From positions 1 to 64,000 of the forward strand of contig CDMY01000345.1 of NCBI GenBank assembly GCA_001179505.1: a DNA stretch of 64,000 nucleotides, read 5' to 3'. Of this stretch, positions 24,913-64,000 are shown piece by piece. How positions within the stretch are numbered: position 1 is the first letter of the stretch; each line of letters begins with the position of its first letter. This DNA is from Vitrella brassicaformis CCMP3155 (taxonomy: Eukaryota; Protista; Chromerida). Both the position numbers and the translations under genes were made by a program. The notes beneath the pieces are model-generated. The model saw only the letters and a program-made list of their open reading frames with translations, ran no database searches and was not told where the DNA came from.

Positions 24913-26116
24913 TCAATAGTAGTCGTAGTAGTCGCCTTCGTCCTCCTCGGTTTCATCCTCCCCTCCCTCAGGGGCGACAGCGGGTCGAACCGCGGACAGT
25001 GGCGGCATGACATGAGGGGCGACAGCGGGTCGAACCGCGGTCATTCCCGGAATGGCAATCCCACCTTTGGGGGGTGGTCGGTGCGGCGCTGCTGCTGGTT
25101 GACGCGTCTCGACAGCCTTCTTTTTGGTCTCGACGGCCTTCTGTGTGGTTTTCTTGGCTTTGGGCTTCTCCTCGGGCGGCTGTTTCTGTGTCTTGGGTGT
25201 GTCTTGGGGGCCCAGGTACTTGGTCAGCACGTACAGAATCTTGGGCACACTCGTGTATCTGCACACATACAGAGAGAGAGAGAGAGAGATATCTATTGGT
25301 CATGTCGACGCAGGGCAAACAAAGCAGACACCCTTTTGACCGACTGATTGACTAAGTTCTCACACACTTGATCTCGGCGATGTTTCCCGGGACGGCCTTC
25401 TTGGGTGTGCGGCCGACCGCTTCGAAGGCGTCTTGGAAGTGCTTGACGTCTTCGGCGGACGTCAGGGGGCGGCAGCGGATGTGTCCCATCTCTTTCCGCA
25501 GCTCCGTGGTGCAGGGGGGGCACTTCCTGACGTCAGTGCACTTGGCTCCGGAGTCCGGATGCCGGGCGACCTTCGCAGCCATGTGCATGCACTGACACAG
25601 AGCGTGCAGAGAGAGAGACACCGAAAATGGCGCGTGCGTGAGTGAGTGCCGCCTCTCTGCCTTGCCCACAGCTGACTGTCACACTCATTGTTGTGAGTCA
25701 CCCTTCCGGCTGTCCAGCAGCTGTTGACGCCTTGCTTGGTTTTGGCGGCCGCCCCCTTGCCCTTGGCCGCTTCAACGAGCTTCAGTGAGTAAAAGTAGCT
25801 GTAGTCGCTGTTGAAGAGCGTCTTGCACATGACCCTGCAGTCCTTTTTCTTGAACGAGCTGCCGACTCCCGTCCGCGGCGCTTTGCCCTCTTGAACGGGC
25901 CTGAAGGTTGGGACCATGATGCAGTGGCGATCTTCCAGGGGCACGGTTTTGATGGGCGCCTGAAAGTCCTTGTCGCCGCCCTTGACTCTCTTTTCTTTTG
26001 CGTCTACGCACACACAACACCTGGTAGAAACACACGCATACACCAACCGAGAGACACAGACAGACAGACAGACAGACAGAGAGAGAGACAGAGAGCAGAG
26101 AGACAGACAGAGAGAT

Positions 26117-26148
<32 letters not shown>

Positions 26149-26976
26149 CGTTCGTGTACTTCTGCGGCATGCCTGGCTCGTATCGTTTCTTCCTTACTGG
26201 GGGAATGGCTCCCCGGACTTTTTCCACACCCTGGCGGTGTCCTGCATGAGCTGGGTGGCCTTGTAGTCCGTGTACTTCATCGCCTTGATCAGATCGCTGT
26301 TGGCGGGTTCCTTAGCGGGGATTTCTTTTTGGTGCCGCTCGTTCCGCTCCTCCTCGGTCTCGGTCTCCTCCTCGGTCTCGTACCCCGGTGAGCTGGCGTC
26401 ACGGATGTGATACTCCCACCCGACGAAGTCGTCCGTATCGTCGTACTCGACCTCCGGGTCTTCGGGGGAAGAGGGGTCTCCTCTAAAGTAGAAATCCCCG
26501 GCAGCCTTGGGCTGCTTCCTGTACGGCGTCACGGGGGGCTCCTTGCCCTCGTCTTCGTCATTTTCGTATTCGCCTTCGTCGTCCGAATACTCAGCCTCAG
26601 TCTCAGTTTCAGTCTCAGTCTCAGTCTCATTGTCGTATGGGCCGTCCGTGGGCTGGTTCCAGCTGCAGAGAGCCAGAGAGCCAGACAGCGAGACAGCGAG
26701 ACAGCGAGACAGACAGACAGCCAAAGGGCAGTCGTGTCGACTTCGCGGTGGGCGAGTCTCTGTCTGTCTTGCCTGTCGTCGAAGAGGGCGCAAGAGTGGT
26801 TGGCAGACTGAGAGAGGTGACCGTCCCGCTCAAGCCTGCACACGCATGAATCAATGCAATTGCATCGATGTGGGTGTCTCTCCGACTCACTGGATGTCGT
26901 GTGCAAGAGCCAGGCTGGCCACCACCACCACCACCAGCAGCAGCAGCGGCAGCAGCGGGGCCGCTGATTTCGCCAT
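24913..26976 (-). CDS. Secreted acidic protein with novel 8-Cys domain (paralog A)
   Basis: Signal MAKSAAPLLPLLLLVVVVVASLALA, E/T/D-rich linker, DRHCIMVP..DCRVMC..NSCWTAGRC..CPPC..HIRC..LYVLT, then a K/P-rich tail ending DYYDYY*. Confidence 0.8.
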
Positions 26977-27261
26977 CAGTCCGGGAAGAAGAGAGAGTCA
27001 GAGCAACAGTGAGATCTGGTGGGTGAGGGGTGAGATGCCTCGAGCGATGTGGTCCTTAGACACTGCAGAGCAACGCCGTTTCCTCTGATCAAGCACACAT
27101 TCACGTCAGGATCTCATGAGGATTGTCGCACAGGGAGCCCAACGCAACGCACGGAAGGCGAAGCCCCCAGTCTGCATGCGCCCCCCTTCCACAGCTCGCA
27201 GTTCGGCGGGACGAGATCTCCCGTCTTCAAGTGCTTCCCGCGGACACCATCGGTGTACGGC

Positions 27262-30249
27262 GAATCAATAAGCAGAGAATCCCACAGCTCACTGACAGTT
27301 CATCTCGTCGCTCTCTCCCCGCTGTGTGTGCACGTTGCTTCAAACAGGCTGTTTCGTCCCATCCCTGACAGAATGACGGTCCGCTGCATGCCTCCCCGAG
27401 TCCATCTTGTCGCCTTCTCTCGCCTCATCTCTATGGCGTTGCTGCTTCTGCCGCTGAACACGACGCAGACTGCCGCTGCCATCGGCAGCGACAGAGCGGC
27501 GAGTGGGCTCCAGCTGATGCGCATGCGTCCGCACAGAGGGAGGGGAGGCCCTCTAGAAGCCTTCCTGCCAAGTGTGCCGAGGGAGATGCCCCTGAGGGGC
27601 TTTGGGATGCGTCGAGATGAGTCTGTGAGGGCCATCCATGCCGGCAAGAGCCGAGAGGTGAGCTGACTGGACAGATCGACGGGGATCCACGCCATTCGTA
27701 CGAACGATTCCTTCTCTGTGCTTCTGCCTGTGTGTGTTTCGTTCAGCTGCGCCATCCATCCACTCCTTCTCCATCCCTGGGCACAATCAACAGAATGCGG
27801 CCTTCAGCTGCAACAGCCAGGTACATGAATGCACACAGACGGACAGGCAGATGGGATGCCGTCCATATGTGTGTGGCTTTCAGATGGCCGTCCATGCGGC
27901 GTCACACAGCGCTGCTCTCTGCCGTCGCCACACAGGCGGAAACGGCCGGCGATTCATCGGAGGCAGTCGGCAAGCCATCGCTGGAAGGTGGGCACACGTT
28001 CATCTCCCCATTGCCGACCACGCAGCAAGACTCATCGTGTGTGGTTCGTCTGCAGGTCGCGTGGAGCTGACAGTGGATGATCTGTTGCCCACGGCTGACG
28101 TGCCGCTCCCTCGAGTGGACTTGACGACAGAGCCTGAGGTGTTCATTGGGAGCGATTATATGGACAAGGCCTATTCGCTGCTGCTGCGCGAGTACGGGAG
28201 GTATGACGATTCGAGCGCGCGAGTGATGCCAATGTCATTCGTCGGCTTCCAAGGGGCTGGCAAGACCAGGATGCTGAAAGAGCTGTCTAAGAAGCTGCGA
28301 CAGGAAGGCATCCCCGCCATCTTTATCCCTTTTGGTGACGAGACCGAGTACAACATAGACACCGAAGGCGCCTCTACGCCGTTGTTCGACTCACTCAATC
28401 TGCGGCTGGCGTGGGCGGCGGCGACCGACGAGGCGCGAGCAAGGGTCGCACGGGCAGCCAATGTGGATGTCGACAAGCTGAACTTTACGATGTGGCTCAG
28501 GCACGCATTCATCAGCGAGCGCACCGCTCGTGAGTGGCTTGACTATCACCCGTGTCTGCTGCTTATCGACGATCTTCACCGCTTTGCGACTCTGCAGGGC
28601 GACGAACGCTATGAAGCGGAGGGCAAAGTGGGCAGATACCTCAAGTGCAATTTCCTTAATCGTCGTGACCGGCATTTCGTCTTCGCTGAGCCCAACAATG
28701 CGACCACTGTCAGCGGCGATTTTCTCTCCTTCCTCGATCCAATGTTCCGGAAGTGGCGTGACCTGCTCCGACCAGAGCTGCCTTTGATCGAGGGAAAAGG
28801 ATCTGGAGCACCTTCTGGACAGCAATGTGACTCGTGGGACGATTTGCTGGGCCGGGCGATCTCCTGGACTGGTATGGGAGATGTGTCAACACGGTGGCTC
28901 TCTGGAGGCCAAAGTCGGCAACGTCAGTTGTGTCGATCCACGGAGAAGATTTGGAGCGATTGGGGTATTATGCGATTTTCTGGCTACGGCGATGGAAGGG
29001 ACCAGCGGCTCTTTTGGGCCTAATATCGGCAACTGGACGGCATTGCTGAATGTGTTTGACGAAGTGAGGACTTCTCAGATTTGGCATGGACGACTGGCGT
29101 GGCACAGAACATACTCACTGCCTCCTTGCTATCTGGCCGGTATGTGCGCTTCTCTGGCGCAATGGGACTCTCTCAAGGAGAAAGCTGGCGAGTCGTTTTG
29201 TGAGGGCCTGAATGCTGTTGCCAGCAGCCTGCGGATGCTCAATCATGCTGAGGAGGGACGCCAGTGGGTCGGGCCGTGTACAGCGGCGATGCTCATACGA
29301 TTGCTGCAAGGCGAAATAGAGAGGCTGACCCGATGGAGCCTCCGCCCCCGCGAAGCTAACGAGGTCCCACCGCAGGTCGGCAATGTGCTTCCCGGCTCTC
29401 TCGTGATACCGTTGAGCGGGGACACACAGTCGATGGGCTGCAAATTTGGCAGGTACTTGAGCTCGGAGTGGAGAAACACTGAGGATGTCATTAAGGCGTT
29501 TGTCCGAAGGAGCGGACCTCCCTCTGAAAGATCCAGATGGGATCCTGACACCGTCTTCTTCTATCAGCCCAAGCCTGATGCCTTCGAGGACAAATATGAC
29601 TTTCTTGTCTTCGTGGTGGACAAGGATGGCAAGCTGAGCGATGTGTGGGGCTACAAGTGTGTCCGCGGCGACGCCTTACCGCCAGGAGAGGACGAGCCTT
29701 TTATCGACTATGAAGATCGCCGGCAGCAGTGGATGGAAACCAATGTGTGGCCGCCTCTGCCGGGCAATCCGCTGCCGGGCGCGGCCGATCTCTTCAGTGA
29801 TCCCGATATGCGGTCGATGGAGATCAAGTCAGTGTGGCTGCGAGGGGGTGGGGGGCGGGGAGAGAAGGCATTTGTGAGGAGGCAGGAGGATGGCCATGCG
29901 TGGATTGTGCCATGTCGAGACGATGTTGATGCACTACTCGGTCTGACACTGAACAGAACCTGTTCCTTTGTACGTTCGAGTGCTTGAGGCATGTGTGTTG
30001 TGTAAGGGGATGTAGATGGACATTTGGGTGTAGACCGGTTGTGTTGTCATTTGTAGTCAAGACGGAGACTTTTCATGTGTGAGAATGTAGACGTGAGACG
30101 CCTGGATGAGAGGATGAATCGTGTTCCTCCAAATCGATAGATCTCACATCAAGGTCACCTGCTGGAGCCAATGCAACTGCAAATGCGCCTTCCCTTCGCC
30201 TCCCTCGAGGAGGAGCGATCCCGCTCAAGCTCGCGAGTGAAGAACAAGG
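27262..30249 (+). repeat. Left arm of a ~3 kb inverted duplication (partner ~36300-39520)
   Basis: Colinear reverse-complement similarity covering the whole NTPase-REase gene, its 3' flank and the ~170 bp upstream of the PPR-TGM ATG. Confidence 0.9.
27373..29987 (+). pseudogene. Crinkler/RHS-like NTPase-REase paralog CR1 (signal+transit-like leader; +1 frameshift at ~28793)
   Basis: Walker A GFQGAGKT, Walker B LLLIDDL, C-terminal FFYQP..KYDFLVFV..VWGYKC. Three leader exons precede GRVELTVDD. Extra G (GAGGGAAAAGG versus GAGGAAAAGG in paralogs); a sequencing error cannot be excluded. Confidence 0.75.
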
Positions 30250-30265
30250 ACAGGTGTCAAAAGCC

Positions 30266-32685
30266 ATGAAGAGACAACGGGACTCACAGCCCCGAGCCAA
30301 CCAGAGGCAAAAAAGACGACGCTTCGCATCCGCGTCACGTTCCGACGAGCGGCATCACCGCGGGCGTGAGCAGCAGCAGCTGATTCACATCAACCAGCAG
30401 ATCAGTGCGTGCACGCGCAAGGGGAGACTCGGAGAGGCATTCCAGGTACAGGCAGGCAGACATGAGCAAAGACAGACAGACAGATGAGTGAATCCCGAGC
30501 GCGTGTCCTTGTATGGCGTTGCAGCACTTCGCCCGGATCAGTGAGCTCAACCTGAAGCCCACGGTAGGCAACACACACGCCGGACGGACACACACAAAAG
30601 CCACCCGCCACACGCATGGGAGTGGATGAATGTGACAACTGATGCGTGAATGACGTCATTCCTTTTGCCCTTTTCCTTCAGATAGTGGCCTACTCGTCGC
30701 TCATCAACTGCTGCGTTCGGTGCGGCGAGATGCAGCGGGCGGCTCACTTGTACGAGCGCATGCAGAATCAGGACGGCATTGCCCCGAACCTGATTGTCTA
30801 CACGACCATGGTCAAGGGGTACAGCAACCAGGGAAACATGGCAGAGGCAGAGAGACTCATGGACGCCATGACGGCCGCCGGCGTGCAGCCGAACATCCGG
30901 ACGCTCTCTGCTCTGATGAGAGGCTACCTCAGGACAGGCCAGCTCGACAGAGCCCTCAAAAATGCCAAGTAAGGTGGGCACGGCCAGGGGCCAGCAGACA
31001 CACACGGACACAGACACACGGATACTGCTGTCGATCTGGGCTTCTCTCTGCGTGTATCTCCAGGCATTTGGTAGAGGCCCAATCGGCAGGACTAATCGAT
31101 GGACAGCTGGCCCCTGAGGAGCATTCCGACAGCGGCGGCGGCGGCATAGCGGCCTGCCAGTCGTCTCTCGCCGCTTTGGTGCAGCTGCTCGCGCAAGCTC
31201 ACCTCATGAGCGACGCAGAGGGCCTGGTGCAGCTGATGGGCCGTCTGGTGGACAGCAGCAGGGCCACAGCAGAGGAGGGAGCCGTCAGCATCCTCCTGGC
31301 CGAGACTTACCACAACATCGCCGTCGCACATGCGCTCTTCGGCGAGAGGAAACGGGCGAGAGACTGCATCGGCAAGGCTCGAGCACTGTCCGGCTCTTCA
31401 CCCACACCACGATCAGCAGCGGCAGCGTCAGCTACCGCCAGCCAAGGCGGCGGTCAGCAGAGGAGTCAGCAGCTCTTCTTGAAGCATCGTGGCAAGGAGC
31501 TGAGGAGAGACCTGGACCATCTCGACAACAAGCTCACCACAGAGTCCGCCGTCACGGTCACACCAGACCAGCTCTTTTCCGCTTTCCGGCGCCTTGTCTG
31601 GACAGAGGGAAATGACGACAGCACACAAGACATAATGGTGGCGGAAGAGCGCGGCACGCACTATGGCCGTCGTCTGTCGTCCTTCGGTCTCACGGACTTC
31701 CTTCGCCGCCACACTCTTCGCGAGCTGAAAGGCACCGACACGTTGTCTGTGAGGGCGTCGGAGTTCTTTCGTGTGTATGGCGGCCAGCTGAGCCGACGGC
31801 AGCACCGGTTCAGGTGGGGGAGGGTGTTCGGTGAGGGGGGCGGGCTGCCCGTGAAGGTCGAGGTGTGCAGTGGGGGCGGCGAATGGGTCACTGCAAAGGT
31901 GGGCGTTCGATCAGGAGAGAGAGAGAGAGAGATGCCCAGTTGTTTGATTGTTTGCTTCCCCCTTGTGTTGTGTGTTACAGGCGAGTTCTGAGGTCGGTGT
32001 GAGCAACTGGGTGGCCATGGAACTCAGACACGACAGGTGCTACCAGGTATGTATGCCACACACGCCCACACGCACGCACAGCAAGCGAGCCGCCCGCCTG
32101 CCTCCATCTATGTGTGTGTGTGTGTCTCTGTCTGCAGATGTTCAGCCGCGGCAGCCTGGCCGCCTTGCCCAATCTGTGCATCGTGGGGGGCGATGCGCAC
32201 GCCGCCATGGTGCGGCACTTCTCTTCCGACAGTGTGGCCGAGGTGTGGGTGACCTTCCCGCAGCCGCCTCTGTGGTCAGGGGGGTCGGGCCACCTCCTCA
32301 CAGGCGACTTCTTCAACCAAATACGGCGGTGAGCGAGCTGAGCCAAAACATCAGACACGCAATACACCCACCCAAGTGTCTGTGTGTGTGTGCGTGTGTG
32401 TGTGTCAGGGTGCTGTGTGTTGGAGGAGTGGTGACGGTCGTGTCGGACAGTCTGCCCTACTGCCACACCATCCACCAGCAGCTGAGCTCTGCCACACAGC
32501 TGGTCTCGACGCACCCACACGAGCCGTGTGTGCGCGGCTGGCCGGACGGCTATGCGCCTCTGTCTGACACTGGAGAGGGGGCTGGAGAGGGAGAGGGAGA
32601 GGGAAGTGGCAGCAGCTATTTCGATCGCTTCTGGAGCGGCGGCAAGAGGACCAGCCGATACTTTGTGCGATGGAGGAAGGAATAA
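30266..32685 (+). CDS. PPR-TGM: pentatricopeptide-repeat protein with C-terminal tRNA (guanine-N7) methyltransferase (TrmB-like) domain
   Basis: About 4 PPRs (AYSSLINCCVRCGEMQRA, VYTTMVKGYSNQGNMAEA, TLSALMRGYLRTGQLDRA). TrmB-like motifs KVEVCSGGGEW, AMELRHDR, NLCIVGGDA, VWVTFPQPP, GGVVTVVSD. Confidence 0.85.
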
Positions 32686-33003
32686 TGTGGTGCGTGTGAG
32701 TGGTATTGCCGACATTGAGCAGCAGTCAGTTGATGGGGGATTGGTGGGAGGGGAGAGGGTCTCTATGCACATGTTGTTTGCACAGACAGACAGACAGACA
32801 TAAACCATAGAGAATGAACGTCAAGATTTTCACACACAGAAGAGCGGTATAATACCCACACACAGACTATGCACCCCCAGCCAGCACATCACATACACCC
32901 CCCGCCAGCACAAATAAATCAACATGTCAACAAGCATCCCGTCGCCGGCCAGACAGACAATGAACGACACAGCGCACAGCCGTCCACACACGCATAAACC
33001 CTC

Positions 33004-35382
33004 TCAGCAACACCAAATTGGCTTGAGGTCCGTTGTCTGGCTCTCAGCGCCCCCGTAGTCGATGACCGCCAGCCATCTGGCCGTGCCGCTTGCTATGGTG
33101 ACGCCAAACAGGGGGAACCAACACGACGATATGATAGACCTGACGACACACACAAAAAGCAAATTGCTCTGTGACATTTGCCCGTGGGCCAGCCGTCAGT
33201 GCTCTCACTCACAGTATGGGCATTGCGGGAAGGGCCATGTAGAGGTTCGTCCAGAGAGCCAGTGCCGCCACGCTGCCCGCCAGCACACACGTGGCCCTCA
33301 CGACCTGCGGCCCATCCGTCTTAGCACCACTGCTTGCCAAAGACACCAGCACCACCGTCAGCCAGCCGCTGCGCACATCGCATCCATCAGAGACAACAGA
33401 CAACACAACGGAGTGAGTCATGAGCGACCCATGTGGCCGTCTGTATGGTTCGGCGTACCTAATGAGAGTGGCCGTCTGTGTGATTGCAGCATCGCCACAC
33501 GTCATGAAGGTGGCCACGATGATGGTCATGATGAGGCCCCCGAGCGGCACAGCCGACAGGAGCGGCCGTGAGGTGGGCGGCAGGGCAAGCGTAAACACCA
33601 CCAACAGCAATGCCTGAGGGAACCAAGCAGCAAACACACACGCTGTCCATCCGGCTAGGCTGTCGGCCCATGTGTTTGTGCATGCCGTGTTCACCCACCT
33701 GTATGGGCTGCCAGATGCCGCTCAACAGGAGCACATACGCCGCCAGATAGGCGGCCTCAAACAAACAGGCCGAAGCCGCACTGCAGCCCTCACTAACCCC
33801 CCCATCTGCACACTTGCCCTCCTGATCGGTGACGGCCTCCTCACTCACGCCACCCTCCAGCTCGCTCTCACTGATGCTGTCGACCGTATTGGCGTCGCAC
33901 CATACACCGCCCCCTCCGCCGCCCATAGGTGTCACCGAGCCAGCCGTGTCCACCTCCCTAGGGGTCTTGTGGTCATGCTCCCGCTTCTCCTGGGCCACCA
34001 TACCCAATGCCACCAAGCCGACCGACTCGGCAGGCAGCGTGAGCGTGCTGTCGATGCACCCAGTTTGGCGCAGGATTGTGTGCCACATCGATCTTATGCT
34101 GCGCCTGGGGCGGGCGGATGGTGCGGTGGGTGGCGTGACGATGGCCGACAGAAGATGGGCGTCATGATAAATGTGGGTGTGCAGTGGGGAGGGGAAAATG
34201 GCGGCCATGTCGATGGCAGTCAGCGGCAGCAGACCCACCAGCAGGCACCTGTGGTCCTCCTGAGATACGAAGGAAGATAAAGACACACATACAAACATCA
34301 CTCATAGAAGAGGATATTTATGTGACCGGTGCTGACCTCCTGGATCGCTTGTGCCATCTCCTTGATAACCTCTCTCTCGCAGTCCCGGACTTTCCGCTCC
34401 CACTCGACAAAGACGCCCAGCCGAGAAGCGCGGCTGCATGACACACACACCACACCACACCACACCACAACACACCACACCACACACAATGGACGAATGA
34501 AATCGGCACCATCCATCCATCCACCCACTGTCTTGGCCTACTTACCCGACGTGGCCCACACCATTGATGAGCCTCTCCGGGGTGCCGATGACAATGCCGC
34601 AGTGGGTGGCCTCTCTCTTGCCCCCACCCATCCCCCGCTGCATGCTCATGCCACCGAAGCTGCCTTTAGTGAGCAGAGGATACACCGAAACCCCCCAGCC
34701 ACGCGCCTCATCGAATGGTAGGGCGAGCAGGCACTGGTCGGCCTGGACTGTGTGGGCGAGGATCGGCGATTCCTCGACGAACCGCATCAGTGAGGGGCAG
34801 ATGTCGATGGGGCCGCACTGCAACGCTCCCAGCAGCGTGTGCAGTGCCTGCCCCATGATGCAACTGGCGGCGATCTGCGTGTCCGCGTAATTAATGCTGG
34901 TGTGGTGATCCTGATTGTCAGTGATGAGGTAGACGCCATCTTGCATGGGCGTGAAGCCGATGGGCACCACGTCCCGCGCCTTGCTGGTGCAGCAGAAAGG
35001 CGCCTGTCGGGCCGACTGATCGTTTGGCGGCCTCAGCAACGGGAAAAGAACGTTGGTAGAGAGCGATGCCTCCTGAAGGCAAACACGCAAGGACAGCAAG
35101 AGAGACGACAGACAGGAAAGGCCATTCATCCACTTGGTTGCTCGCCACATGCACCCAGTCGCTCACCCGCGCTCCGTCTTGTTGCTCGTTTGTTGCCTTG
35201 GTGATGCTCGCCGCTGCAGCAGGAGTGCTGGCGGGGCTGTCTGCCTTTGCGAGTGTCGTTGTGGATGGCTGTTGCTGCTGGCCAGGGATGGGCGTGAGGC
35301 GAGTGGCGATGCGGCACAGCACATCCACCAAACAGAGGAGCTGTATCAGCCCCGTCAGCATGACCTGCGGGGGTTTCACACA

Positions 35383-35431
<49 letters not shown>

Positions 35432-36864: not shown

Positions 36865-39408
36865 TCAAGCACTCGAACGTACAAAGGAACAGGTTCTGTT
36901 CAGTGCCAGACCGAGTAGTGCATCAACATCGTCTCGAGATGGCACAATCCACGCATGGCCGTCCTCCTGCCTCCTCACAAATGCCTTCTCTCCCCGCCCC
37001 CCACCCCCTCGCAGCCACACTGACTTGATCTCCATCGACCGCATATCGGGATCACTGAAGAGATCGGCCGCGCCCGGCAGCGGATTGCCCGGCAGAGGCG
37101 GCCACACATTGGTTTCCATCCACTGCTGCCGGCGATCTTTATAGTCGATAAAAGGCTCGTCCTCTCCTGGCGGTAAGGCGTCGCCGCGGACACACTTGTA
37201 GCCCCACACATCGCTCAGCTTGCCATCCTTGCCCACCACGAACAGAAAAAAGTCATACTCATCGTTGAAGGCATCAGGCTCAGGCTGATAGAAGAAGACA
37301 GTTCGAGGATCCCATGTAGATCTTTCAGAGGGAGGTCCGCTCCTTTCGACAAACGCCTTGACGACATCCTCAGTGTTTCTCCACTCCGAGCCGAAGTACC
37401 CGCCAAATTTGCAGCCCGTCGACTGTGTGTCCCCGCTCAACGGTATCACGAGAGAGCCGGGAAGCACATTGCCGACCTGCGGTGGGACCTCGTTAGCTTC
37501 GCGGGGGCGGAGGCTCCATCGGGTCAGCCTCTCTATTTCGCCTTGCAGCAATCGTATGAGCATCGCCGCTGTACACGGCCCGACCCACTGGCGTCCCTCC
37601 TNNNNNNNNNNNNNNNNNNNNNNNNNNNNNNNNNNNNNNNNNNNNNNNNNNNNNNNNNNNNNNNNNNNNNNNNNNNNNNNNNNNNNNNNNNNNNNNNNNN
37701 NNNNNNNNNNNNNNNNNNNNNNNNNNNNNNNNNNNNNNNNNNNNNNNNNNNNNNNNNNNNNNNNNNNNNNNNNNNNNNNNNNNNNNNNNNNNNNNNNNNN
37801 NNNNNNNNNNNNNNNNNNNNNNNNNNNNNNNNNNNNNNNNNNNNNNNNNNNNNNNNNNNNNNNNNNNNNNNNNNNNNNNNNNNNNNNNNNNNNNNNNNNN
37901 NCCAGGAGATCGCCCGGCCCAGCAAATCGTCCCACGAGTCACATTGCTGTCCAGAAGGTGCTCCAGATCCTTTTCCTCGATCAAAGGCAGCTCTGGCCGG
38001 AGCAGGTCACGCCACTTCCGGAACATTGGATCGAGGAAGGAGAGAAAATCGCCGCTGACAGTGGTCGCATTGTTGGGCTCAGTGAAGACGAAATGCCGGT
38101 CACAACGATGAAGGAAATCGTACTTGAGGTATCCACCCACTTTGGCATCCGCTTTAGAGCGTTCGTCGCCCTGCAGAGTTGCAAAGCGGTGAAGATCGTC
38201 GATGAGCAGCACACATGGCTGACGGTCCAGCCACTCACGCGCAGTGCGCTCGCTAATGGATGCGTGCCTGAGCCACATCGTAAAGTTCAGCTTGTCCACG
38301 TCCACATTGGCTGCCCGTGCGACCCTTGCTTGCGCCTCGTCGGTCGCCGCCGCCCACGCCAGCCGCAGATTGAGTGAGTCGAACAACGGCGTAGAGGCGC
38401 CTTCGGTGTCTATGTTGTACTCGGTCTCGTCACCAAAAGAGATAAAGACAGCGGGGATGCCTTCCTGTCGCAGCTTTTTAGACAGCTCTTTCAGCATCAG
38501 GGTCTTGCCAGCGCCTTGGAAGCCGACGAGTGACATTGGCATCACTCGCGCGCTCGAATCGTCATACCTCCCGTACTCGCGCAGCAGCAGCGAATAGGCC
38601 TTGTCCATATAATCGCTCCCAATGAACACCTCAGGCTCTGTCGTCAAGTCCACTCGAGGGAGTGGCACCTCAGCCGTGGGCAACAGATCATCCACTGTCA
38701 GCTCCACACGACCTGCAGACGAAAGTGACACACCAGACAAGATGAGTCTTCCTGCCTGGTCGTCAATGGGGAGATGAACGTGTGCCCACCTTCCAGCGAT
38801 GGCTTGCCGGCTGCCTCCGGTGAATCGCCGGCCGTTTCCGCCTGTGTGGCGACGGCAGAGAGCAGCGCTGTGCGACGTCGCATGGACGGCCATCTGAAAG
38901 CCACACACATATGGACGGCATCCCATCTGCCTGTCCGTCTGTGTGCATTCATCTACCTGGCTGTTGCAGCTGAAGGCCGCATTCTGTTGATTGGGCCCAG
39001 AGATGCAGAATGAGTGGATGGATGACGCAGCTGAACGAAACACACACACACAGGCAGAAGCACAGAGAAGGAATCGTTCATGCGAATGGCGTGGATGCCC
39101 GTCGATCTGTCCAGTCAGCTCACCTCTCGGCAAGTGCCGGCATGGATGGCCCTCACAGACTCATCTCGACGCATCCCAAAGCCCCTCAGGGGCATCTCCT
39201 TCGGCACACTTGGCAGGAAGGCTTCTAGAGGGCCTCCCCTCCCTCTGTGCGGACGCATGCGCATCAGCTGGAGCCCACTCGCCGCTCTGTCGCTGCCGAT
39301 GGCAGCGGCAGTCTGCGTCGTGTTCAGCGGCAGAAGCAGCAACGCCATAGAGATGAGGCGAGAGAAGGCGACAAGATGGACTCGGGGAGGCATGCAGCGG
39401 ACCGTCAT
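36865..39408 (-). CDS. Crinkler/RHS-like NTPase-REase paralog CR2 (signal+transit-like leader; spans an assembly gap)
   Basis: Same exon structure as CR1, GFQGAGKT, VLLIDDL, EYDFFLFV..VWGYKC. No lesion is visible outside the gap. Confidence 0.75.
37602..37901. other. Assembly gap (300 N) inside CR2
   Basis: Run of n; the equivalent stretch in CR1 is about 380 bp, so the gap size is nominal. Confidence 1.
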
Positions 39409-50448: not shown

Positions 50449-50675
50449 GGCTGTCACGGGATGTGCTTCCGCGATGAATCAAACCGCGCGGCGAGATGAA
50501 AAGCGATGAACCTGCAGAAAGGAAGTGCGAGCTTCTCTATTAGCTCGCCGAGGGAAGGGGGCCTGAGTGAACGGGGATGGTTCGGTTTCGTGCTTAGCGG
50601 CTGATACCAGTGAGAAGCTTGAACAGAAATACCGTTCGTGGTGGATAGATCACTCCCACTCATCCATCTGTCGGC

Positions 50676-54755: not shown

Positions 54756-55437
54756 TGGAGGGAGGGGCGGGCAGAGGGGAGAGATACAGGCAGACAGACA
54801 GACAGAGAGGCATCTTGGTAGCTGTGACCAGCGGGGCCGAGGAGGGCGGAGAGAGAGCCTGTGTGTATGGTAGATCTAGCCCATTGATTTGATTGCAGAA
54901 ACACTTGCATGGCATGGAATATCTACTTTGTGTGTGCGAGTGTCTATGAGGGTGACTCTCCATCGCTCGGCGTTTCGGCTGGCCGGCCGCCGATTGACAG
55001 ATGCGATGCGATGCAGATCAGGGACTTTTACAGACAGACCGACCTCAAACCCTCTCAGTGAATGCAGTCATCTGACCCACCACTTCCCCGACGACGCCCT
55101 CCTGTGGGTCAGATGGGCTCTCGAGGGCAATTTACGTGGCCCGCGTCGCCCACTCAGCCCCCCGGCCTTGCCAGAGGCATCATAGGTGTGCATCTGACAC
55201 CCGATATCACTGCAAATGACGGCGGGAGAAACTCAAGCTCGCAAATGGATCAGGGAGAGACGGCGAAAATCTGTAGACGCTGTCTGCGTCTGCCGTCTGT
55301 TGACATCCGTTGAGCCTAATCCGATCGCAATCAGTCGATGTTCGTCGATTCGAGATTGTCGAGACACCGTGTCTTCCGCGTCGTCCACCCCTTCCACCAT
55401 TCGGAGCGTTGATTGGAGGTACTTACGTTGAGTGAGA

Positions 55438-57444
55438 ATGGCGACCACCAGTGAGGGTCCCTCTATGACCACCGGCGAGGCCGTCAATCCCGCCGAGCTG
55501 ACGAGCAACCCCACGATGGCGACTGACACGCACCCCATCGGTGCAGGAGGTGCCGAACTTGCCCAGGGCGGCCACACAGGCTCTGGGCTGACCAACGGGG
55601 AGGTCCAGCAGCCCAAGGGCAGCGACCAGCAGTCAGCCGGGGTCGGTGTGGACGGCGAGCAGCGGCCTTCTGCCTTTGGGTCATCGGCTGCTGCAGGCAT
55701 GTCGTTCTTCCCCCCGCTGCCCTTCCTGCCCCACTACACGGCCACGGCCGCTGCTGGGGAGTACTCGAACGGAGCGGCGGCAGGGCTGCCGAGCTTCTAC
55801 CCTCCCCCTCCCCTGCAGCCGCTCACGCTACCCCTCCCCAATGGGGACGCCACCAGCAGCCAGACGGGAGCAGCACTCAGCAGCAGCAGCGGCGCGGCCA
55901 AGCGCACCGCGGCTGCGTCGCGCGTCAAGGTGGCGGGAGTTGGTGCTATGGGGGGTGTGGGGGGTGTGAGTGAGAAGGACCGCCGCCGTCTGCAGATGGC
56001 CATCCAGAACGAGGACACCTACGCGCAGATCCTGGCTCGTGTGCTGCTGCGTCAGCTCAAGGAGAAGATGCCGGGCGGCAACCCCCAGCAGCTGCGCATA
56101 TCCCTCAAGGGCAAACCCGACCGCTTTGTCGTCAAGTCCGACGACCGCCCCGCCGCGGCCTTCGCCATCCACACGGGCGTCACGAACGCGCTGCAGCAGG
56201 CCATCGACGAGCGCAACACCCGTGCGGCCGCGCTGGAGCTGCCGCCGTGGGACAACTACCAGTCGATTCTGGCGGTGTCAGCCGACGAAAACGAGCGCAA
56301 GAGTGAGGGCGAGGAGGGCGTGGGCGACCCCCTGGCCGGCGACATGTCGCTCTGCCACGGGCTGGAGGAGATCAGCGGCACCGCCAACGGCGAGGGGGCG
56401 GGCGACGCCATCTACCCCTTCTTGCTGCCTGTGGGCAGCAACACCGGTGCGGGCGAGGCCGCTGGTGGTGGGCAGGGGGGGAGGAACGGCAGCTTGTATG
56501 TGAGCGAGACCGAGACGGCCGCCATCCGCACCATGATTCAGGAGATCTCAGGCCGCCTGAGTTCGCTGCTGCCGCCCAGCCCGTCGAGCTCGCCCCGCCT
56601 CGTCATGAAACTCCTCTGGGAGAGCGAGACCCAGTCGCTCATCGCCCAGTACGGCTTCAAGGGCGTCACGGCCGCCGGTCAGCCATTCCGCCTCACCAGG
56701 GCCGCAGAGGTGCCCCGGGTGATGCGCCAGATCATCACGACCCGCAACCAGCTGGCGCAGCGGCTGGGGCAGCCGCTCATTGAGGGCTTTGACGGCATCC
56801 TGGACCAGTTCACCCTCGCCATGAGCGCTCCCAGTGTCACCCATCCCCTCACCCACCACACCACCGGGGGCAGTGGCGGGGGCACACGGGGCCGCAGGGG
56901 GTCAAAGGGCGGCGGGGGGCTGTCGCGGGGGCACAGGCAATTCCCGGCTGGCGCTGTGTGTGGGTACCCGTCGGAGGGCGGGGGTCTGTTTGAGTCGCTG
57001 ATGGATTTCCACGCCGACATGCCGCTGAAGGTGGAGCAGATTCACATGGTGGCGGCCACGCTGCTCAAGCAGCTCGAGAAGCACTACGTGGCCGTGCAGC
57101 GGCGGAGGGGCGATGCTGGCGCCATGTTCCCCTTTGGCATCACCTGGGACCCTGTGTAAGCCAAAAGCCAAGCCAACAAACCGCACACATGCACTCACAC
57201 ACACACAGGACACAGAGGGGGGAGTGGTTTATGTGTGTTCTGCTGTGTGTGGATGTGTGTGTGGTTCATTCAGTCGTTGTAGAGTTCGTTGGAAGGTTGG
57301 CCACGGCCACTCACGGAAGCACTGCGAGAAGCGCGTGTCGCGCAACGGAGGCGGCGACGGACTGAGAGAGGCCATACAGGCAACACACACACACACACAC
57401 AGAGGGCAAATACCAGCAACACCATGCCCTCAGCCCCTCTCACC

Positions 57445-57477
<33 letters not shown>

Positions 57478-58167
57478 CGTGTGTGTGTGTGTGTCTTGTG
57501 ACTGTCCTTTATTCAGTATGCCATAGACAACCGCAACGCGTGGGCGCGCACCGAGGGGCTGCCTGAGGTGACGGGGTACGAGGACATTCTGCAGACCGAC
57601 AACGCCACTCTGCTGCTGTCCGCCGACCACCGTGACTTCGACAGCCACCTGCTCACGCACCAGCAGGCCCACACCAGCCACTCGGTCGGGAGGGACCGGC
57701 CGGCCGACCTGCTCGCCCGTATCAAGCAGGACACCGATCAGGATTTCATGCTCATGAACACCGCCGATGGCAGCAGCTACGGGGCCGCCGCTGCTGCTGC
57801 TGGCTATGGCGACACGGACCTCATGCAGATGCACCACACACCCACCGGACACGGCCAGGGGGGAGGCAGGAAGCGCAAGAACTCCGGCGCCGGCAGCGAT
57901 GCCGATAAGCCGGGCGGCAAGAAGGCCAAGCGCACCACCAAGAAGCAGCAGCAGCAGCAGCAGATGGCAGCAGAGGCCTTCGAGGCACCAACACACAACG
58001 ACCAGCAGCAGCAGGAGCAGCAGCAGCAGCAGGTCATCGACAACATGCCCGACGTGGCCATGAAGCAGCCAGAGGAGGAAGCAGCACCGGCCGACATCGA
58101 CCCGGTGGCCGTGGACGTCAGTGCCGCTGCTGCTGCTGCTGCTGGTGGTGAGCAGGAGGCCGCATGA
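55438..58167 (+). CDS. Putative nuclear protein with three internal repeats (divergent AP2-like DNA-binding domains?)
   Basis: Repeats end ALQQAIDERN..LPPWDNYQSIL, VMRQIITTRN..QPLIEGFDGIL and AIQYAIDNRN..LPEVTGYEDIL. Basic NLS-like GRKRK..KKAKRTTKK; Q-rich tail. Middle exon at ~57280-57378 is inferred. Confidence 0.65.
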
Positions 58168-58891
58168 ATGGATGGATCGATGGCTGGATGGATGGCCGAC
58201 TAGCTAGATACTACCCACCTACCTACTGAGTGGATGTGTGTGTGTGTGTATGTGTAATGGAACACACCAACGACCGACCGATCGACCGACCCAAGGATGC
58301 ATCCGTGGAGACGGACCTCTATCTGTCGATCTTTCTTTTTGCGTTTGAAGCACTCGCATGGGCAGTCGGTCGCGCAGTAAGCACTTGTAAGGTCACTTTC
58401 ATCATGACTCAACGCGCACACACAGAGGGAGGGAGGGAGGGAGGGAGGGATTCGGGGAGAGAGGGATGGGTTTCTCACAATGCCCCCTCACTTCACGAAC
58501 CCACCATGTACACTTACTTGTACGCCATCCATCCATCCATGTGTATCAGTGTGTGCGCGTTGGCTGTGGTTCTCCATGGCAAGAGTAAAGGGAGAGAGAG
58601 AGGGAGAGAGAGAGATGACTGGAGGGGGAGGGAGAGGGAGAGGGGGAGGGGTGGTTGGCTGCAGCTACGGTAGGCGGTCACCCCCCACCTGTGACCCTGC
58701 ATGCATGTAGTTCATGTCACGTGTGGTCGGTTGGTTCTTCGTAGAGAGACCCGTAACTGACTGACTGACGACTCGACTCACTCATCGCCTTCAGGCAAGA
58801 AGTGAATGCAATGCACTCGTTCGTTCCGCTGCACAATACCCCCACCCGGCACCCACGCCACACAATGTCTCTCTCCATCTGTCTGTCTGTC

Positions 58892-60506
58892 TTATCGGTC
58901 AAAGCGCGTCAACACATACAGAGTAGACGGCACATTCTCATACAGAGCAGCCACAACCGTCCCCTCTCTCAGTTCCTTGTCCGTGCCCCTCTGAAATATC
59001 TGCAGCCACTCGCCACTCAGCCGCCTACACCGCACATGTGCCCACACACCGCCGGCAGCCATGCCCTCCCTCCCACACACACTGCAATCCTTCACGTCAG
59101 CTGAGGGGCAATCCACACGCTGTCCCCCCACCCACTGGTGCGCCTTGATCCACTTGATCTTCGCACATCTCCCGGCCGTCTCGCATCGATTGACGCCGTG
59201 TTTGTAAGGGTGTGATGGGGACTCGTCGGCCTCGGCTTGGCGAGTGAGGTCGGAGCTGTATAGGTAGCTCATGTGGCCTCCGAGGGAGTGGCAGACGGCG
59301 ATGCAGTCGGCGGCCGAGAGAGAGAGGGGGGCGGTCGGTGTCTTGATGCAGCGACGGTCTCTGAAGGGCACGTTATTGATGTTGTCCTCCTTGCTCAGGG
59401 AACATACGCAGCACCTGAACTCACAGACACATCCACACACAAGGGATGGAAGGATGGATGGATGGATGTCTCTAGTCAGCTTCACTCGGGAAAGAGCTCC
59501 TTCTGCCCTGATGTGCTCTTGATCTTTCGGTAGGCCTCGCTCTTTTGGAAGGTACCCCATGGCTCAACGGCGATGCCCTTTGTGGCCGGCAGTGTCGTGT
59601 TCTCAAAGCCAGGCGAAGAGGACCAGGGTTCGTAGTCACTGGGGATGAATATCCGGGGGTCCACCTTAATCACCTTTGTTGGCTCTTCTGCATGACACAC
59701 AGAAACACACAGAGACACAGACAAACGTCTGTCTACCCACCCCAACCCCCCCACCCTTTGTCTCCGTCACGAGCACATCCAACGGCACAAAGTCCTTCCT
59801 GAGATGACCCGCATTCATGGCCACATAGCCGTCGTAGCACCAGCCCACATCTTGACAGCTCCTGTCGACGTAGAAGGCGTATTGCGCCATGTGTCGCTTC
59901 GTGCTGCACACGCCATTGCACGTCTCGGCAGCAGCAGAAGGCGGCAGGAAGGTGCAGGAGCGGTGGGCGGGACGGGCTTGTCCTCCCTCAGCTCTCGACT
60001 GGCAGTGGCAGCAGCTGCGTACATGCCAGTGGATGGACAGAACAGAAAAGGCTCGAAAGTGGCCATCAGGGAGGGGAGGATAGTAGGGGTGCCTAGGTCC
60101 CTTACCCGGTGTATTCGGATTCGTTGTCGTCAGTGAGGGGTTTGACAGTGACTTGCCTGGCCGATTTGGCATGATCGACGCTCTGCAGGCGTACTACATC
60201 CTCCTTTTGCTGAGGCCTGATTGCATATAATTAGAGACGTGTGAGCAGAGAGGAGAGCACGTGCCGCGTCGCACATGCGTGGCTGCCGCTCACCGCGGCG
60301 TTGGGGATACGACGGGGCCGCTGCAGTGAAGTGCAACCATTCATCCACCCCCACCAAGCACAGACAAAGCCTCTGACAAGTTGGCCCGGTCTCCACTTCT
60401 GTGTGCGGGTACAGAGGCCACCTTACCTGCCCGGTTTGTTCGCTGACGCTCGATTGGACACGGCCAGCAGAGGCAGGCTGCACACCAGCAGGATTTGCAA
60501 TGCCAT
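58892..60506 (-). CDS. Secreted protein with novel 8-Cys domain (paralog B) plus an extra PAN-like Cys segment
   Basis: Signal MALQILLVCSLPLLAVSNRASA; ETCNGVC..QYAFY; PWGTF..ELFP; DRRCIKTP..DCIAVC..NRCETAGRC..CSVC..HVRC..LYVLTRF. Confidence 0.78.
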
Positions 60507-60593
60507 CGATGACTCACGGAACCACGACCAACTCGAGCTCGCACAACTTCCCCCACGCCCCCCAGTCTGCATGCCAGTGTCGTCTCCCCCGAG

Positions 60594-62323
60594 ATGCATT
60601 TGTTCGCAGTAGTCTCCCTTGTCGTGGCTGCTGCCACGGCCACCAAGATGACCATGCGGCATGGCGTCCTCTCCTCCATGAGAAACGCCCCCTCGGCGGT
60701 GCGCCTCACCCGAATGGTGCTCCGCGGCCTCTCAGGTGCATGAGGCCGGTGGTGTGTAGTCTGCAGGCAGAAACATGACTGCGTCTCTCTGCCCTTCTGC
60801 TTTGCAATGTTTTGCAATGCACTGCACTGCAGGGCGAGACCGACTCCGCCAGCCAGTGTGCCGCCAGCTGCCGAGATTGAGGAGTCATCCGAATCTGAGC
60901 CGTGGACGGGTGGGTCTGTGCCAGGCCCCAACGGTGAGGATGACATTGACGACGACGAGACTGAGGAGGAGGAGGAAATGTCTGTGCAAGATGAGGTACA
61001 TATGTAAAGGGTGGCACCGCATGGGTAGACAGACAGACAGACAGACAGACAGCCAGACCATTCTCGAATACATGCACCGCTGCACACAGGGCAGGGCATG
61101 CAGCCGATGCTGCACGCCGCGCACTTTTGTTCATTCACGTTGGATGATGGGTACAGGAGGACGAGGAGCTCGAGAGGGATCTCAGAGCCATCGCCGCAAA
61201 GAAGCAGACGCCAATCGACGTCAGCAAGCAGCAGTTTGGGGCAAACATGTATGAATTCAACAAGGACATCGACGTGCCGCCGGACGCCGAGCGGGAAAAC
61301 CCCTCTATGGAGGAGGACGGTGTGTGTGTGCGAGATGATACTCATGAGACAGGCAGGACTTCTTCTTCCATCCACTGCGCTGGTTTCGTGTGCAGAGGTG
61401 TTTCCGTACGTGAGCAAGAGAATGGATCCGCTGCTCACCCTTCGGACCTACGATGTCACCGTGGTGCCGTGGGACGTTTTCCTGCAGAGCGGCTCGTCGC
61501 AGTGGCTGAGAGACGCCGAAGAGCAGGGAACCCGGCAAGAGAGCTTCTACCCTATGTGAGGGCGTGCGTGTGTGCATCCACACCATAAGGCATCCATGTC
61601 TCCCTCCCTCTCTCTCTCTTTGTAGGTGTTGCGTGTGCTCCTCTGCCGCCAAGGCGGAAGACATCGACTTGCCCAACACCAGATGCATCAAGGTGGGCAG
61701 ACACCGATGATGTCGCACCACTGTGGATCGACTTCACTGGTTGATCGGGCCGCATACCTCGCAGGTAGGGCCCTACATTCCGCCGCCCCCCTCCGGCCCC
61801 AGGCCCCGCATGTTTGGTCAAACCGACTGCCTCGTCGTCTTCGACAAGCAGGACCACCTCTGGGCGATCTTTTACGGCAGTGTGGATGATGAGTTGGACC
61901 CGCAACACGAAATTCCTGGCGTGCGTGTTGCGGAGAGATCGGCATGTGAAAGGGTGGAGCAGTGCAACAAGAAGAACGTGCATCTGGCGGTGAGAAAGGC
62001 GGAGAGTGGGGTCTGGACAAAGTGCTCAAAATCGGACCCGCCCGGCTCTTGTGGCTTGTGCTCGGGGAAAGAGCTGCCATCCCATATGGGCTTCATCCGG
62101 TGTGAGGAGGTCAGTGAAGAGACAGAGAGAGAGAGAGAGAGAGAGATAAGTGTCTGTTTGTATGCAGGTCGATGAGCCTCTGCTGGAGATTCTGAGGCAT
62201 GGGAGCAATATGGGGCTGACTCCAGAGGTTGGGGACCTCGCCGCCGTCAGGTATTCGCTAGTCAGGGAGAATATCTATGTGCTGACCCAATTCGACGAAC
62301 ACATGCTTCACCGCACGAGCTGA
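60594..62323 (+). CDS. Secreted acidic protein with novel Cys domain (paralog C)
   Basis: Signal MHLFAVVSLVVAAATA; D/E-rich linker; PWDVF..SFYP; NTRCIK|V..DC..ACERVEQC..CGLC..FIRC..AAVRY..IYVLTQF. Confidence 0.78.
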
Positions 62324-62511
62324 TGCGTGGCACTGTTAGCTGAAATACGTACGGGACTCTTGGCACTCTCTTGGCCCCCGCTATGTCACTCTGCTGATGT
62401 GAATTGCTGGATACTCTCTGGTGTGTGAGCCTTCAAGACCTCATACATACGATGACATACACATACATGTGTTCGACGATATGTCTCTCTCCCTGCTCAT
62501 AATATTGACAC

Positions 62512-64000
62512 CTATACCAGCTGTGTAAGCACCCACACGCACTCGCTCTCCAAGTTGTACCGAAAGGCAACCACATCGTGGACATGGATGCCCCCTGACG
62601 GCGGCGGCGTGCCTGTGCGCTCATACAGCCGATATACGTCGTCCACCTGCCTCTGGCTTTGCAGCCGATCACATCTGACGTACCTGATCAAAGCTCATAC
62701 ATCCATGGGTTACATGGCAGAGACACAGACACGATGATCGTCTTGTCTCGCCCACCATTTTCCCTTGGGGTCTCTCTGCCCGCATAGGGGACATTCGATG
62801 AGGTCCCCCGGGTCTCTGCACCGCTGTCTGCCACTCTTGTCCAAGACGGGCATGGCGAGAAAATGCCTCATGCACCGACCGGCCGTCTCGCACTTGTTGA
62901 AAGGCTGGCCTGTCTGTGGGTCGTGCTTCCAATAGTGCTGCGGCTGTACTTGACCCGAGTGGTAGAACCACGTGTGGTCACTCCCAAAGGCAACACGACA
63001 CACATGATAGCAGTCGCCGGTCTGCGAGGAGAACAAGCGCACGATGGAAAAGGGCATACACACATGCAGCTATCGGGCCTCTGTGTGCATACCCACCCGC
63101 CCCATAGGCGGTCCGCCGTCGAAAAGCCGCACCCCCGGGCCAGTCCTTCCCACCGGTGGGCCACTATGTTCATCGAAAGGGACAAACCTGGGCACCTTGA
63201 CGCAGTGCCGCTCTTTCCAAGGGATCCTTGTGATGGCGTCTCCCGACCCCCCAATGCCCTGGTCTTCTCCCTCCGGGCTGTCAACGCACACGCAGCAGCT
63301 GATCGACCACACGCAAGTCACCACGAGCAATGTGTCTCTCTCTCAGGTGTCTGTCATATGCAAAGCCTGGGCACCTTGCGCCCACCCACTTTGGGAACGG
63401 CTCTCTGGCCATTGCTGTCTGGGCGTGTGAGAATGTCGTCAGCACTCTTCGGTGGTCTGGCGATCCCTCGAATGCGTCCCATCTCCTGACGATGACGTAC
63501 ACGCCATCCCCTCGCACCGTGTCATCAGGCGGTGGCCGCGGCGGAGGAAGGGTGTGCGGCTTGCGGGTGGGCGCTGGGGGTTCCTCTTTCCTGATCTCTG
63601 GTGTTGGAGTCGTCTGAGGCTCTTCTTCCGGCTTTTCTTGGTCATATATCGTGGCGCCTGGTGAGCTGGCATAAGCCATGTGGTCCATTTCTCTCGCATC
63701 AGCAAAGAGCCCGAGCCTGCAATATCATCAGAGATGTTGCAGCCTTCTCCCGTGCCGTGCCGGTGTCTCTGTCTGTCAAGCTCCCCACTTCTACCATTCC
63801 ATGTCATCTGCCCTCTGGGGAAGTGAAGGTGAGGAGCTCGTGGCCCCGAGATGGGTCTCGTTCCAGTGGGAGTCATCCTCCCCCTCGTCGCCAGGCAGCA
63901 CGTACACATCCTTCCTGCACGTCACAAGCACTCATTCGGACATGTCGCGCTGTGTGGGTAGTATCCTACTTGTTGTCTTCCTCTCCGGTGATGGGCTGAC
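62512..64000 (-). CDS. Protein with novel 8-Cys domain (paralog D), 5' end outside window
   Basis: RWDAF..EPFP; ERHCVKVP..DCYHVC..FGSDHTWFY..NKCETAGRC..CPLC..|YVRC..VVAFRY..VWVLTQLV*. Confidence 0.78.

What the first reader, a model, noticed from the sequence alone, without database searches (positions are those of the whole stretch)
24913..64000. Unrecognised secreted 8-cysteine domain family with four paralogs in the window
Genes at 24913-26976(-), 58892-60506(-), 60594-62323(+) and 62512->64000(-) share an ordered motif series: W-x2-F..[FY]P followed by an intron at the same site (the W-x2-F part is not evident in A); [RH]C[IV]x[VT]; DC-x3-C..[SW]-x-Y; C-[EW]-TAGRC (CERVEQC in C); C-x(5-8)-C-x2-C; [HFY][IV]RC; A-x-x-Y..[LIV][YW]VLT. 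Variable acidic linkers precede the domain. The CxxxC..xFY..C core hints at a remote PAN/apple fold, as in apicomplexan microneme adhesins. I recognise no named family.
Basis: partly seen in the sequence, partly recalled or inferred. Interest (0 to 1): 0.75.

Follow-up and report, generated by a model that had tools for sequence, protein, structure and literature searches.

The report
Vitrella-only secreted 12-cysteine domain family
Four neighbouring genes of the alga Vitrella brassicaformis, plus three elsewhere in its genome, encode secreted proteins ending in a roughly 210-residue, 12-cysteine domain that matches no described family or solved fold and was found in no other organism.

Summary
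Each member scores E <= 1e-21 against a profile built from the others.

Corrections:
- The exon after the shared intron begins with an invariant CCVC. The domain therefore has 12 conserved cysteine columns, 11 of them invariant, not 8.
- It starts at V-x-x-W before the intron and is always C-terminal.
- The genome is Vitrella brassicaformis CCMP3155.
- There are three more members: E (contig C738), F (C770) and G (C323). G carries the domain behind TSP1 and VWA modules.

The PAN/apple idea is not supported. No member matches a PAN model, and hhalign against Vitrella's own PAN domains gives probability 0.07%.

Best reading: a lineage-specific, disulfide-rich extracellular module of unknown ligand, probably acting in adhesion or in the wall matrix.

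The assembly gap is more than 10 kb from every gene. The scan had already noted the B-C-D cluster on an overlapping window (s1-242771).

The parts
24916..26976 (-). Gene A (CEM03586.1, 500 aa). Exons 26890-26976, 26775-26834, 26197-26664, 25702-26019, 25367-25591, 24916-25257; stop codon at 24913-24915. Layout: hydrophobic leader, D/E/T-rich linker, the 12-Cys domain, then a 102-aa K/P/A-rich tail ending in an acidic stretch.
   Evidence: Exon map. An MMETSP transcript ORF (P0002) is identical to the last 323 aa, so the three introns inside that stretch, including FPQ|CCVC, are confirmed by RNA.
25201..26250 (-). Domain-coding part of A, from R-V-W...EPFPQ through CCVC to LYVLTKY. It is split by introns at 26020-26196, 25592-25701 and 25258-25366.
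   Evidence: Alignment A4; leave-one-out E 3.7e-36.
58895..60506 (-). Gene B (CEM03599.1, 400 aa). Exons 60429-60506, 60293-60322, 60105-60215, 59756-60013, 59485-59688, 58895-59413; stop codon at 58892-58894.
   Evidence: leave-one-out E 2.6e-39.
58895..59413 (-). Last exon of B, which encodes the domain from CCVC to YVLTRFDR in one piece. It was the query for most searches.
59756..60013 (-). Extra cysteine-containing exon of B (CCHC...C-x3-C...YAFY...C). It looks like a half copy of the domain by eye but is not statistically related to it.
   Evidence: HMM score 0.4 bits while shuffles reach 14.5; Smith-Waterman z<=1.8; no Pfam match.
60594..62320 (+). Gene C (CEM03600.1, 353 aa), the most diverged member. 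It has CERVEQC in place of CETAGRC and F in place of the second Cys of DC-x3-C. Annotated exons: an 8-nt first exon 60594-60601, then about 60833-60995, 61157-61318, 61395-61556, 61627-61698, 61771-62112, 62171-62320.
   Evidence: leave-one-out E 8.8e-23.
62515..64000 (-). Gene D (CEM03601.1, 403 aa). Exons 62515-62682, 62755-63021, 63097-63297, 63392-63715, 63794-63913 and 63969-64034. The first exon, 64111-64170, lies beyond the window end.
   Evidence: leave-one-out E 4.7e-40.
59414..59484 (-). The shared intron between FP-x and CCVC in B. The equivalent introns are A 26020-26196, C 61557-61626 and D about 63298-63391.
   Evidence: Phase 0 in A, B, C and E; shifted by 1 nt in the annotated model of D; absent in G.
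60507..60593 (.). An 87-bp spacer between the divergently oriented start codons of B and C. It is a candidate shared promoter region.
   Evidence: Sequence; not tested further.

Best explanation
Shown. A, B, C and D belong to a seven-gene family of Vitrella brassicaformis, with E on contig C738, F on C770 and G on C323. The proteins share a C-terminal domain of about 200-220 residues. The order of its conserved elements is V-x-x-W, [FY]P-x-CCVC, R-x-C-[IV]-K-x-P, DC-x3-C, F-Y, N-x-C-E-T-x-x-R-C, C, C-P-x-C, R-C, G-[DE]-x-x-A-x-x-Y and [YW]-[VA]-L-T. It has 12 conserved cysteine columns. Paralogs are only 24-35% identical and give a star-like tree.

Strongly inferred. The proteins enter the secretory pathway through a hydrophobic N-terminal leader. 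The domain is an extracellular globular module held together by about six disulfides. It sits behind a variable, probably disordered, acidic or Pro/Ala-rich linker.

Inferred, less securely. The domain is a binding or anchoring module of the cell surface or the sporangial wall matrix. It would tie the linker (or, in G, the TSP1 and VWA adhesive modules) to a wall polymer or to a partner protein. The strong divergence around a fixed cysteine frame would then reflect a diversifying surface or recognition role. The ligand is unknown.
For: Family. Leave-one-out profile E-values run from 8.7e-22 to 4.7e-40, and pairwise z reaches 15. Eleven Cys columns are invariant in all 7 members and the twelfth in 6 of 7, at 24-35% identity. 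Six of the seven members share the intron before CCVC.

Real genes. A is transcribed and spliced as annotated.

Secretion. All seven ORF starts have a hydrophobic stretch, with maximum Kyte-Doolittle(12) of 2.3-3.5. G carries TSP1 (1.6e-13) and VWA (9.3e-6) modules ahead of the domain. Woo et al. 2015 curate secreted TSP1/vWA proteins in chromerids (PMC4501334).

C-terminal position. Only 1-14 residues follow the LT motif in six members, and 102 in A.

Restricted distribution. Among 1.84e9 representative proteins the profile found only Vitrella proteins. G was not in the profile, yet it came back at 6e-12, which serves as a control of sensitivity. A metagenome scan found nothing.
Against: - No signal-peptide predictor was available. 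The leader of C is dropped in the annotated model, which has an 8-nt first exon, and the leader of E is dropped too.
- Disulfide bonding is inferred from cysteine conservation and context, not shown. I could not read the model's coordinates.
- C has 11 cysteines, so one would be unpaired.
- The structural models rest on alignments of 7 sequences (mean pLDDT 61 and 67). The fold searches effectively tested only the C-terminal half.
- Nothing here bears directly on the ligand, the location in the cell or the life stage.
- Absence from Chromera rests on predicted proteins in the library, not on a search of its genome.
Confidence: 0.5

Rival explanations
1. The domain is a very remote PAN/apple module, as in microneme adhesins such as MIC4.
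For: The segment DC-x3-C followed by an aromatic strand (SYFY) resembles PAN's C-x3-C...C-x-x-F-x-Y on a helix followed by a strand. The AF2 model places a helix (residues 86-97) and then a strand (101-105) there. Vitrella makes heavy use of PAN, with at least 123 sites.
Against: No PAN family matches any member even at E<=10, and none of the PAN_1 sites in the genome lies in these genes. hhalign of family profile A4 against Vitrella PAN profile A5 gives probability 0.07%, E 0.69, and aligns a different segment. The invariant third PAN cysteine is absent. The domain is three times the length of PAN. No PAN chain is among the listed fold matches.
Confidence: 0.05
2. The conserved cysteines bind metal, in a zinc-ribbon or treble-clef-like arrangement, and the proteins act inside the cell.
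For: C-P-x-C...[IV]-R-C looks like a zinc knuckle. The best PDB sequence matches include the zinc ribbon of TiaS (E 0.57) and a Tim10-type twin-Cx3C protein (E 0.11).
Against: Both matches are insignificant. All seven ORFs open with a hydrophobic leader. G is fused to the extracellular modules TSP1 and VWA. Twelve cysteines spread over about 210 residues of mixed alpha/beta structure are typical of disulfide frames. There is no second C-x2-C knuckle after R-C.
Confidence: 0.07
3. The family is older and wider, for example shared with Chromera, colpodellids or apicomplexans, but has diverged beyond what these searches can detect. In that case it would be a fast-evolving branch of a family that already exists.
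For: The paralogs are saturated, with terminal branches of 0.9-5.7 substitutions per site. Close relatives of Vitrella are barely sampled. Intron-rich eukaryotic genes are poorly called in metagenomes. F itself is missing from the protein library.
Against: The profile recovered G, which was not in it, at 6e-12 among 1.84e9 proteins. A homologue as distant as the paralogs are from each other should therefore have been seen.
Confidence: 0.2
4. The motif series is chance, or an artefact of translating GC-rich, repeat-rich non-coding DNA.
For: None beyond the general risk of reading cysteine-rich frames in GC-rich sequence. One such case did turn up: the extra CCHC exon of B looks like the domain but does not score.
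Against: The leave-one-out E-values, transcript support for A, independent annotation of six members and the shared intron all argue against it.
Confidence: 0.01

Closest known systems
PAN/apple domain (Pfam PF00024, PF14295), as in apicomplexan microneme adhesins
   Same: Both are secreted, disulfide-bonded modules. Both have a C-x3-C segment predicted as a helix, followed by an aromatic strand. PAN is abundant in the same genome.
   Different: There is no HMM match and no profile-profile match. The third PAN cysteine is lacking. This domain has 12 cysteines in about 210 residues, against 4-6 in about 75. It carries specific CCVC, CETAGRC and YVLT motifs and is always C-terminal and single-copy, not arrayed.
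TRAP/MIC2-type adhesins of Apicomplexa (VWA + TSP1 + transmembrane segment + tail)
   Same: Member G (CEM02327.1) has a leader, TSP1 and VWA modules. This is the extracellular adhesive pairing that Woo et al. 2015 noted in chromerids.
   Different: G ends in the 12-Cys domain, where TRAP has a transmembrane segment and a cytoplasmic tail. The other six members have neither TSP1 nor VWA. Woo et al. found no orthology between chromerid TSP1/vWA proteins and TRAP.
Other alveolate cysteine-rich extracellular domains known in chromerids (oocyst wall protein, CPW-WPC and LCCL domains)
   Same: They are of the same general kind: lineage-restricted, cysteine-framed secreted modules linked to walls or surfaces (PMC4501334).
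   Different: No Pfam model of these families matches any member. The motif series and the domain length are different.

Membership tests
PAN/apple (PF00024 PAN_1 and related) | A significant match to a PAN family HMM | tested here: not met
   hmmscan of all members at E<=10 shows no PAN family. A six-frame PAN_1 search of the genome gives at least 123 sites, none in A-G.
PAN/apple (PF00024 PAN_1 and related) | The cysteine frame C-x3-C-x5-6-C-x2-F-x-[YF]...C-x-L within about 75 residues | tested here: not met
   Vitrella PAN domains show it, with invariant C23, C27, C33 and C45. The family has DC-x3-C but no cysteine before the FY strand, and C also lacks the second Cys.
PAN/apple (PF00024 PAN_1 and related) | Profile-profile similarity to PAN | tested here: not met
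   hhalign of A4 against A5 gives probability 0.07% and E 0.69 over 18 columns on a different segment.
PAN/apple (PF00024 PAN_1 and related) | The PAN fold: a central helix packed on a five-stranded sheet | tested here: inconclusive
   No PAN chain is listed by Foldseek or VIA-align.
TRAP/MIC2-like adhesin (member G only) | VWA and TSP1 extracellular modules | tested here: met
   TSP1_spondin 1.6e-13, TSP_1 1.5e-7 and VWA 9.3e-6, all above the curated cut-offs.
TRAP/MIC2-like adhesin (member G only) | A C-terminal transmembrane helix and a short acidic cytoplasmic tail with a penultimate Trp | tested here: not met
   G ends 14 residues after the LT motif of the 12-Cys domain, and its last residues are polar. 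No transmembrane predictor was run.
Zinc ribbon / zinc knuckle | Two C-x2-C knuckles and a significant match to a zinc-ribbon family | tested here: not met
   There is only one C-P-x-C, and the following cysteine is a lone R-C. The best PDB match, TiaS, has E 0.57. Pfam Zn_clus scores E 0.12, below its cut-off.
The family defined here (Vitrella C-terminal 12-Cys domain) | The ordered motif series with 12 Cys columns and a significant score against a profile of the other members | tested here: met
   A, B, C, D, E and G score E from 8.7e-22 to 4.7e-40 leave-one-out. The exons of F align in register and score 4.2e-10 in the genome search, though F was itself in the profile used there.

The most novel reading that the evidence does not exclude
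The domain is a new disulfide-rich fold invented in the Vitrella lineage. It would serve as a C-terminal wall- or matrix-anchoring or adhesive module. That would make it an independent, free-living-alga counterpart of the adhesive modules that apicomplexans deploy from micronemes, and G would show it being combined with the TSP1 and VWA modules that parasites later used for gliding and invasion.
Probability: 0.3. Interest if true: 0.55.

Novelty: new variant of a known kind. Interest (0 to 1): 0.4.

Why it matters
Chromerids are the free-living reference point for how apicomplexan parasites built their extracellular adhesion repertoire. This is a seven-member secreted domain family with no detectable relatives, and in one member it is already joined to TSP1 and VWA modules. 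That adds a concrete, testable piece to the picture of lineage-specific surface modules being invented and shuffled before and alongside parasitism.

It is also a compact candidate for a new disulfide-rich fold and for a Pfam entry.

Its importance is limited, though. Orphan secreted families are common in protists, and nothing yet links this one to a phenotype.

Tried and rejected
- PAN/apple homology was rejected.
- The extra CCHC exon of B (59756-60013), and the N-terminal FPDCCCV segment of G, as half copies of the domain. This is not supported: 0.4 bits against shuffles reaching 14.5, and z<=1.8.
- Weak genome hits on C209, C791 (a polyketide-synthase-like ORF), C253, C442, C378 and C759 were inspected and do not carry the motif series.
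- P0007 (a repetitive, Thr-rich, bacterial-type protein) and P0008 (a Tc/RHS-type giant) from the big search are chance matches to the C...SYFY segment and lack the cysteine frame.
- The word-based protein search was uninformative. The first run fell foul of the length filter. In the second, low-complexity words filled the candidate list.
- The ESM Atlas gave no usable hit.
- The alignment was too diverse for the search for related loci, and a metagenome scan with the B domain alone found nothing.
- A maximum-likelihood tree of six members is star-like and saturated, so no order of duplications can be given.
- No paper mentions the six UniProt accessions.
- No hand-joined spliced sequence was sent to any tool. 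Exons were given by reference. The spliced proteins used were the public predicted proteins returned. F was never joined: its exons were used apart, and they were only tallied column by column.
Full report
**What the window is**

The sequence is GC-rich (about 58%) and has spliceosomal introns. The assembly has 72.7 Mb in 1,064 contigs. Those are the figures published for Vitrella brassicaformis CCMP3155 (PMC4501334). The proteins encoded here are deposited under that name.

**The assembly gap**

The N run at 37602-37901 is 10.6 kb from gene A and 21 kb from gene B. It touches none of the four genes. Whether the flanks are continuous does not bear on the finding and was not resolved.

**Checking the observation**

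Three-frame translations and exact mapping of the deposited proteins give:
- A at 24916-26976(-)
- B at 58895-60506(-)
- C at 60594-62320(+)
- D at 62515-64170(-), with its first exon beyond the window end

| Member | E-value |
|---|---|
| A | 3.7e-36 |
| B | 2.6e-39 |
| C | 8.8e-23 |
| D | 4.7e-40 |
| E | 8.7e-22 |
| G | 8.7e-27 |

**Corrections to the observation**

For A, an MMETSP transcript ORF identical to the last 323 residues confirms this. The next exon therefore begins with CCVC, which is CCAC in F.

With this, the domain has 12 conserved cysteine columns. Eleven are invariant in all seven members. The twelfth, the second Cys of DC-x3-C, is F in gene C.

The domain starts before the intron, at V-x-x-W, and ends at [YW]-[VA]-L-T. 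It spans about 200-220 residues and is always at the C-terminus. Only 1-14 residues follow it, except for the 102-residue tail in A.

The intron between FP-x and CCVC is at phase 0 in A, B, C and E. It is shifted by one nucleotide in the annotated model of D and is at the same place in F by my reading. It is absent in G, where one exon spans residues 392-604. The other introns are not shared.

**More members**

Searches of the whole genome found two further loci:
- E on C738 (CEM31944.1)
- F on C770

F has a hydrophobic leader and a Pro/Glu-rich linker, but it did not appear among the predicted proteins.

The profile search of 1.84 billion representative proteins returned A-E and a seventh protein, G. 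G is CEM02327.1, 697 aa, at C323:97868-100749. Pfam finds TSP1 and VWA modules in G ahead of the domain. A profile search of the genome found no further copy.

**What it is not**

- No member matches any Pfam family in the domain, even at E<=10. NCBIfam gives nothing either.
- Profile searches of PDB sequences give only insignificant rows, with a best E of 0.11.
- Two AlphaFold2 models were made. One is the last exon of B, with mean pLDDT 61. The other is the transcript-supported part of A with alignment A4, with mean pLDDT 67, core elements at 80-92 and pTM 0.57 despite a disordered tail.
- PAN/apple was tested directly. The PAN_1 model finds at least 123 sites in this genome, none in the family. 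Eight of those sites, aligned, show the canonical four-Cys frame. hhalign of the family against that profile gives probability 0.07%.

**Distribution**

All six significant hits among 1.84e9 representatives are from Vitrella. G was not in the query profile and still scored 6e-12, so a homologue as distant as the paralogs are from each other should have been seen. The two remaining hits lack the cysteine frame and are chance matches. A metagenome scan with the B domain found nothing. No paper cites the accessions. The chromerid genome paper's section on extracellular proteins does not describe the family.

**How it most likely works**

Shown: this is a seven-member family with an invariant cysteine frame and 24-35% identity between members. 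Its tree is star-like and saturated. Four members lie on one contig, and B, C and D are adjacent in alternating orientation.

Strongly inferred: the proteins are secreted. All seven ORFs open with a hydrophobic stretch, and G carries extracellular TSP1 and VWA modules. The domain is held by about six disulfides.

Inferred with less support: the domain is a binding or anchoring module of the surface or the sporangial wall matrix. It would be displayed on, or would tether, a variable disordered linker. The linker is D/E-rich in A and C, Pro-rich in D, and Pro/Ala-rich in E. The ligand is unknown.

**Verdict**

The family is real and undescribed, and as far as can be seen it is restricted to Vitrella. 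It is a new family within the familiar class of cysteine-framed extracellular modules. It may have a new fold, but function and fold are both unproven.

**How spliced sequences were handled**

No hand-joined spliced sequence was sent to any tool. Exons were passed by reference. The spliced proteins used were the public ones returned by the searches. F was never joined.

Noticed in passing
window 60506-60594: The start codons of B (minus strand, 60506) and C (plus strand, 60594) face away from each other with only 87 bp between them. This suggests a shared bidirectional promoter for two paralogs.
   Followed up: partly
window 60594-60840; L002:313-520: The deposited model of C (CEM03600.1) uses an 8-nt first coding exon (ATGCATTT|GT) and so drops the hydrophobic leader encoded by the ORF at 60594. 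It is the only phase-compatible donor for the annotated acceptor. The model of E (CEM31944.1) starts at an internal Met and drops the leader at L002:313. Both 5' ends need RNA evidence.
   Followed up: partly
L006 (G000:C770:193005-196184) and L043:7306-9400: Family member F has a leader, a Pro/Glu-rich linker, FPQ|CCAC and the rest of the domain in four exons. It was not among the predicted proteins returned by the library search, so it may be unannotated or wrongly modelled.
   Followed up: partly
window 59590-59640 (B) and L006:1110-1140 (F): B and F share a short extra motif, PWSSSPGF, upstream of the domain (EPWSSSPGFENTT in B, APWSSSPGFADP in F). It is not seen in the other members.
   Followed up: no
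G000, many contigs: The PAN_1 model finds at least 123 sites above its cut-off in this genome, often in tandem arrays (for example on C347, C573, C324 and C248). PAN/apple modules are greatly expanded in Vitrella.
   Followed up: no
L034-L039 (G000:C323:97868-100749): Member G combines a leader, a cysteine-containing N-terminal stretch, TSP1, VWA, a Pro/Ala/Lys linker and the 12-Cys domain. It lacks the family's otherwise shared intron.
   Followed up: partly
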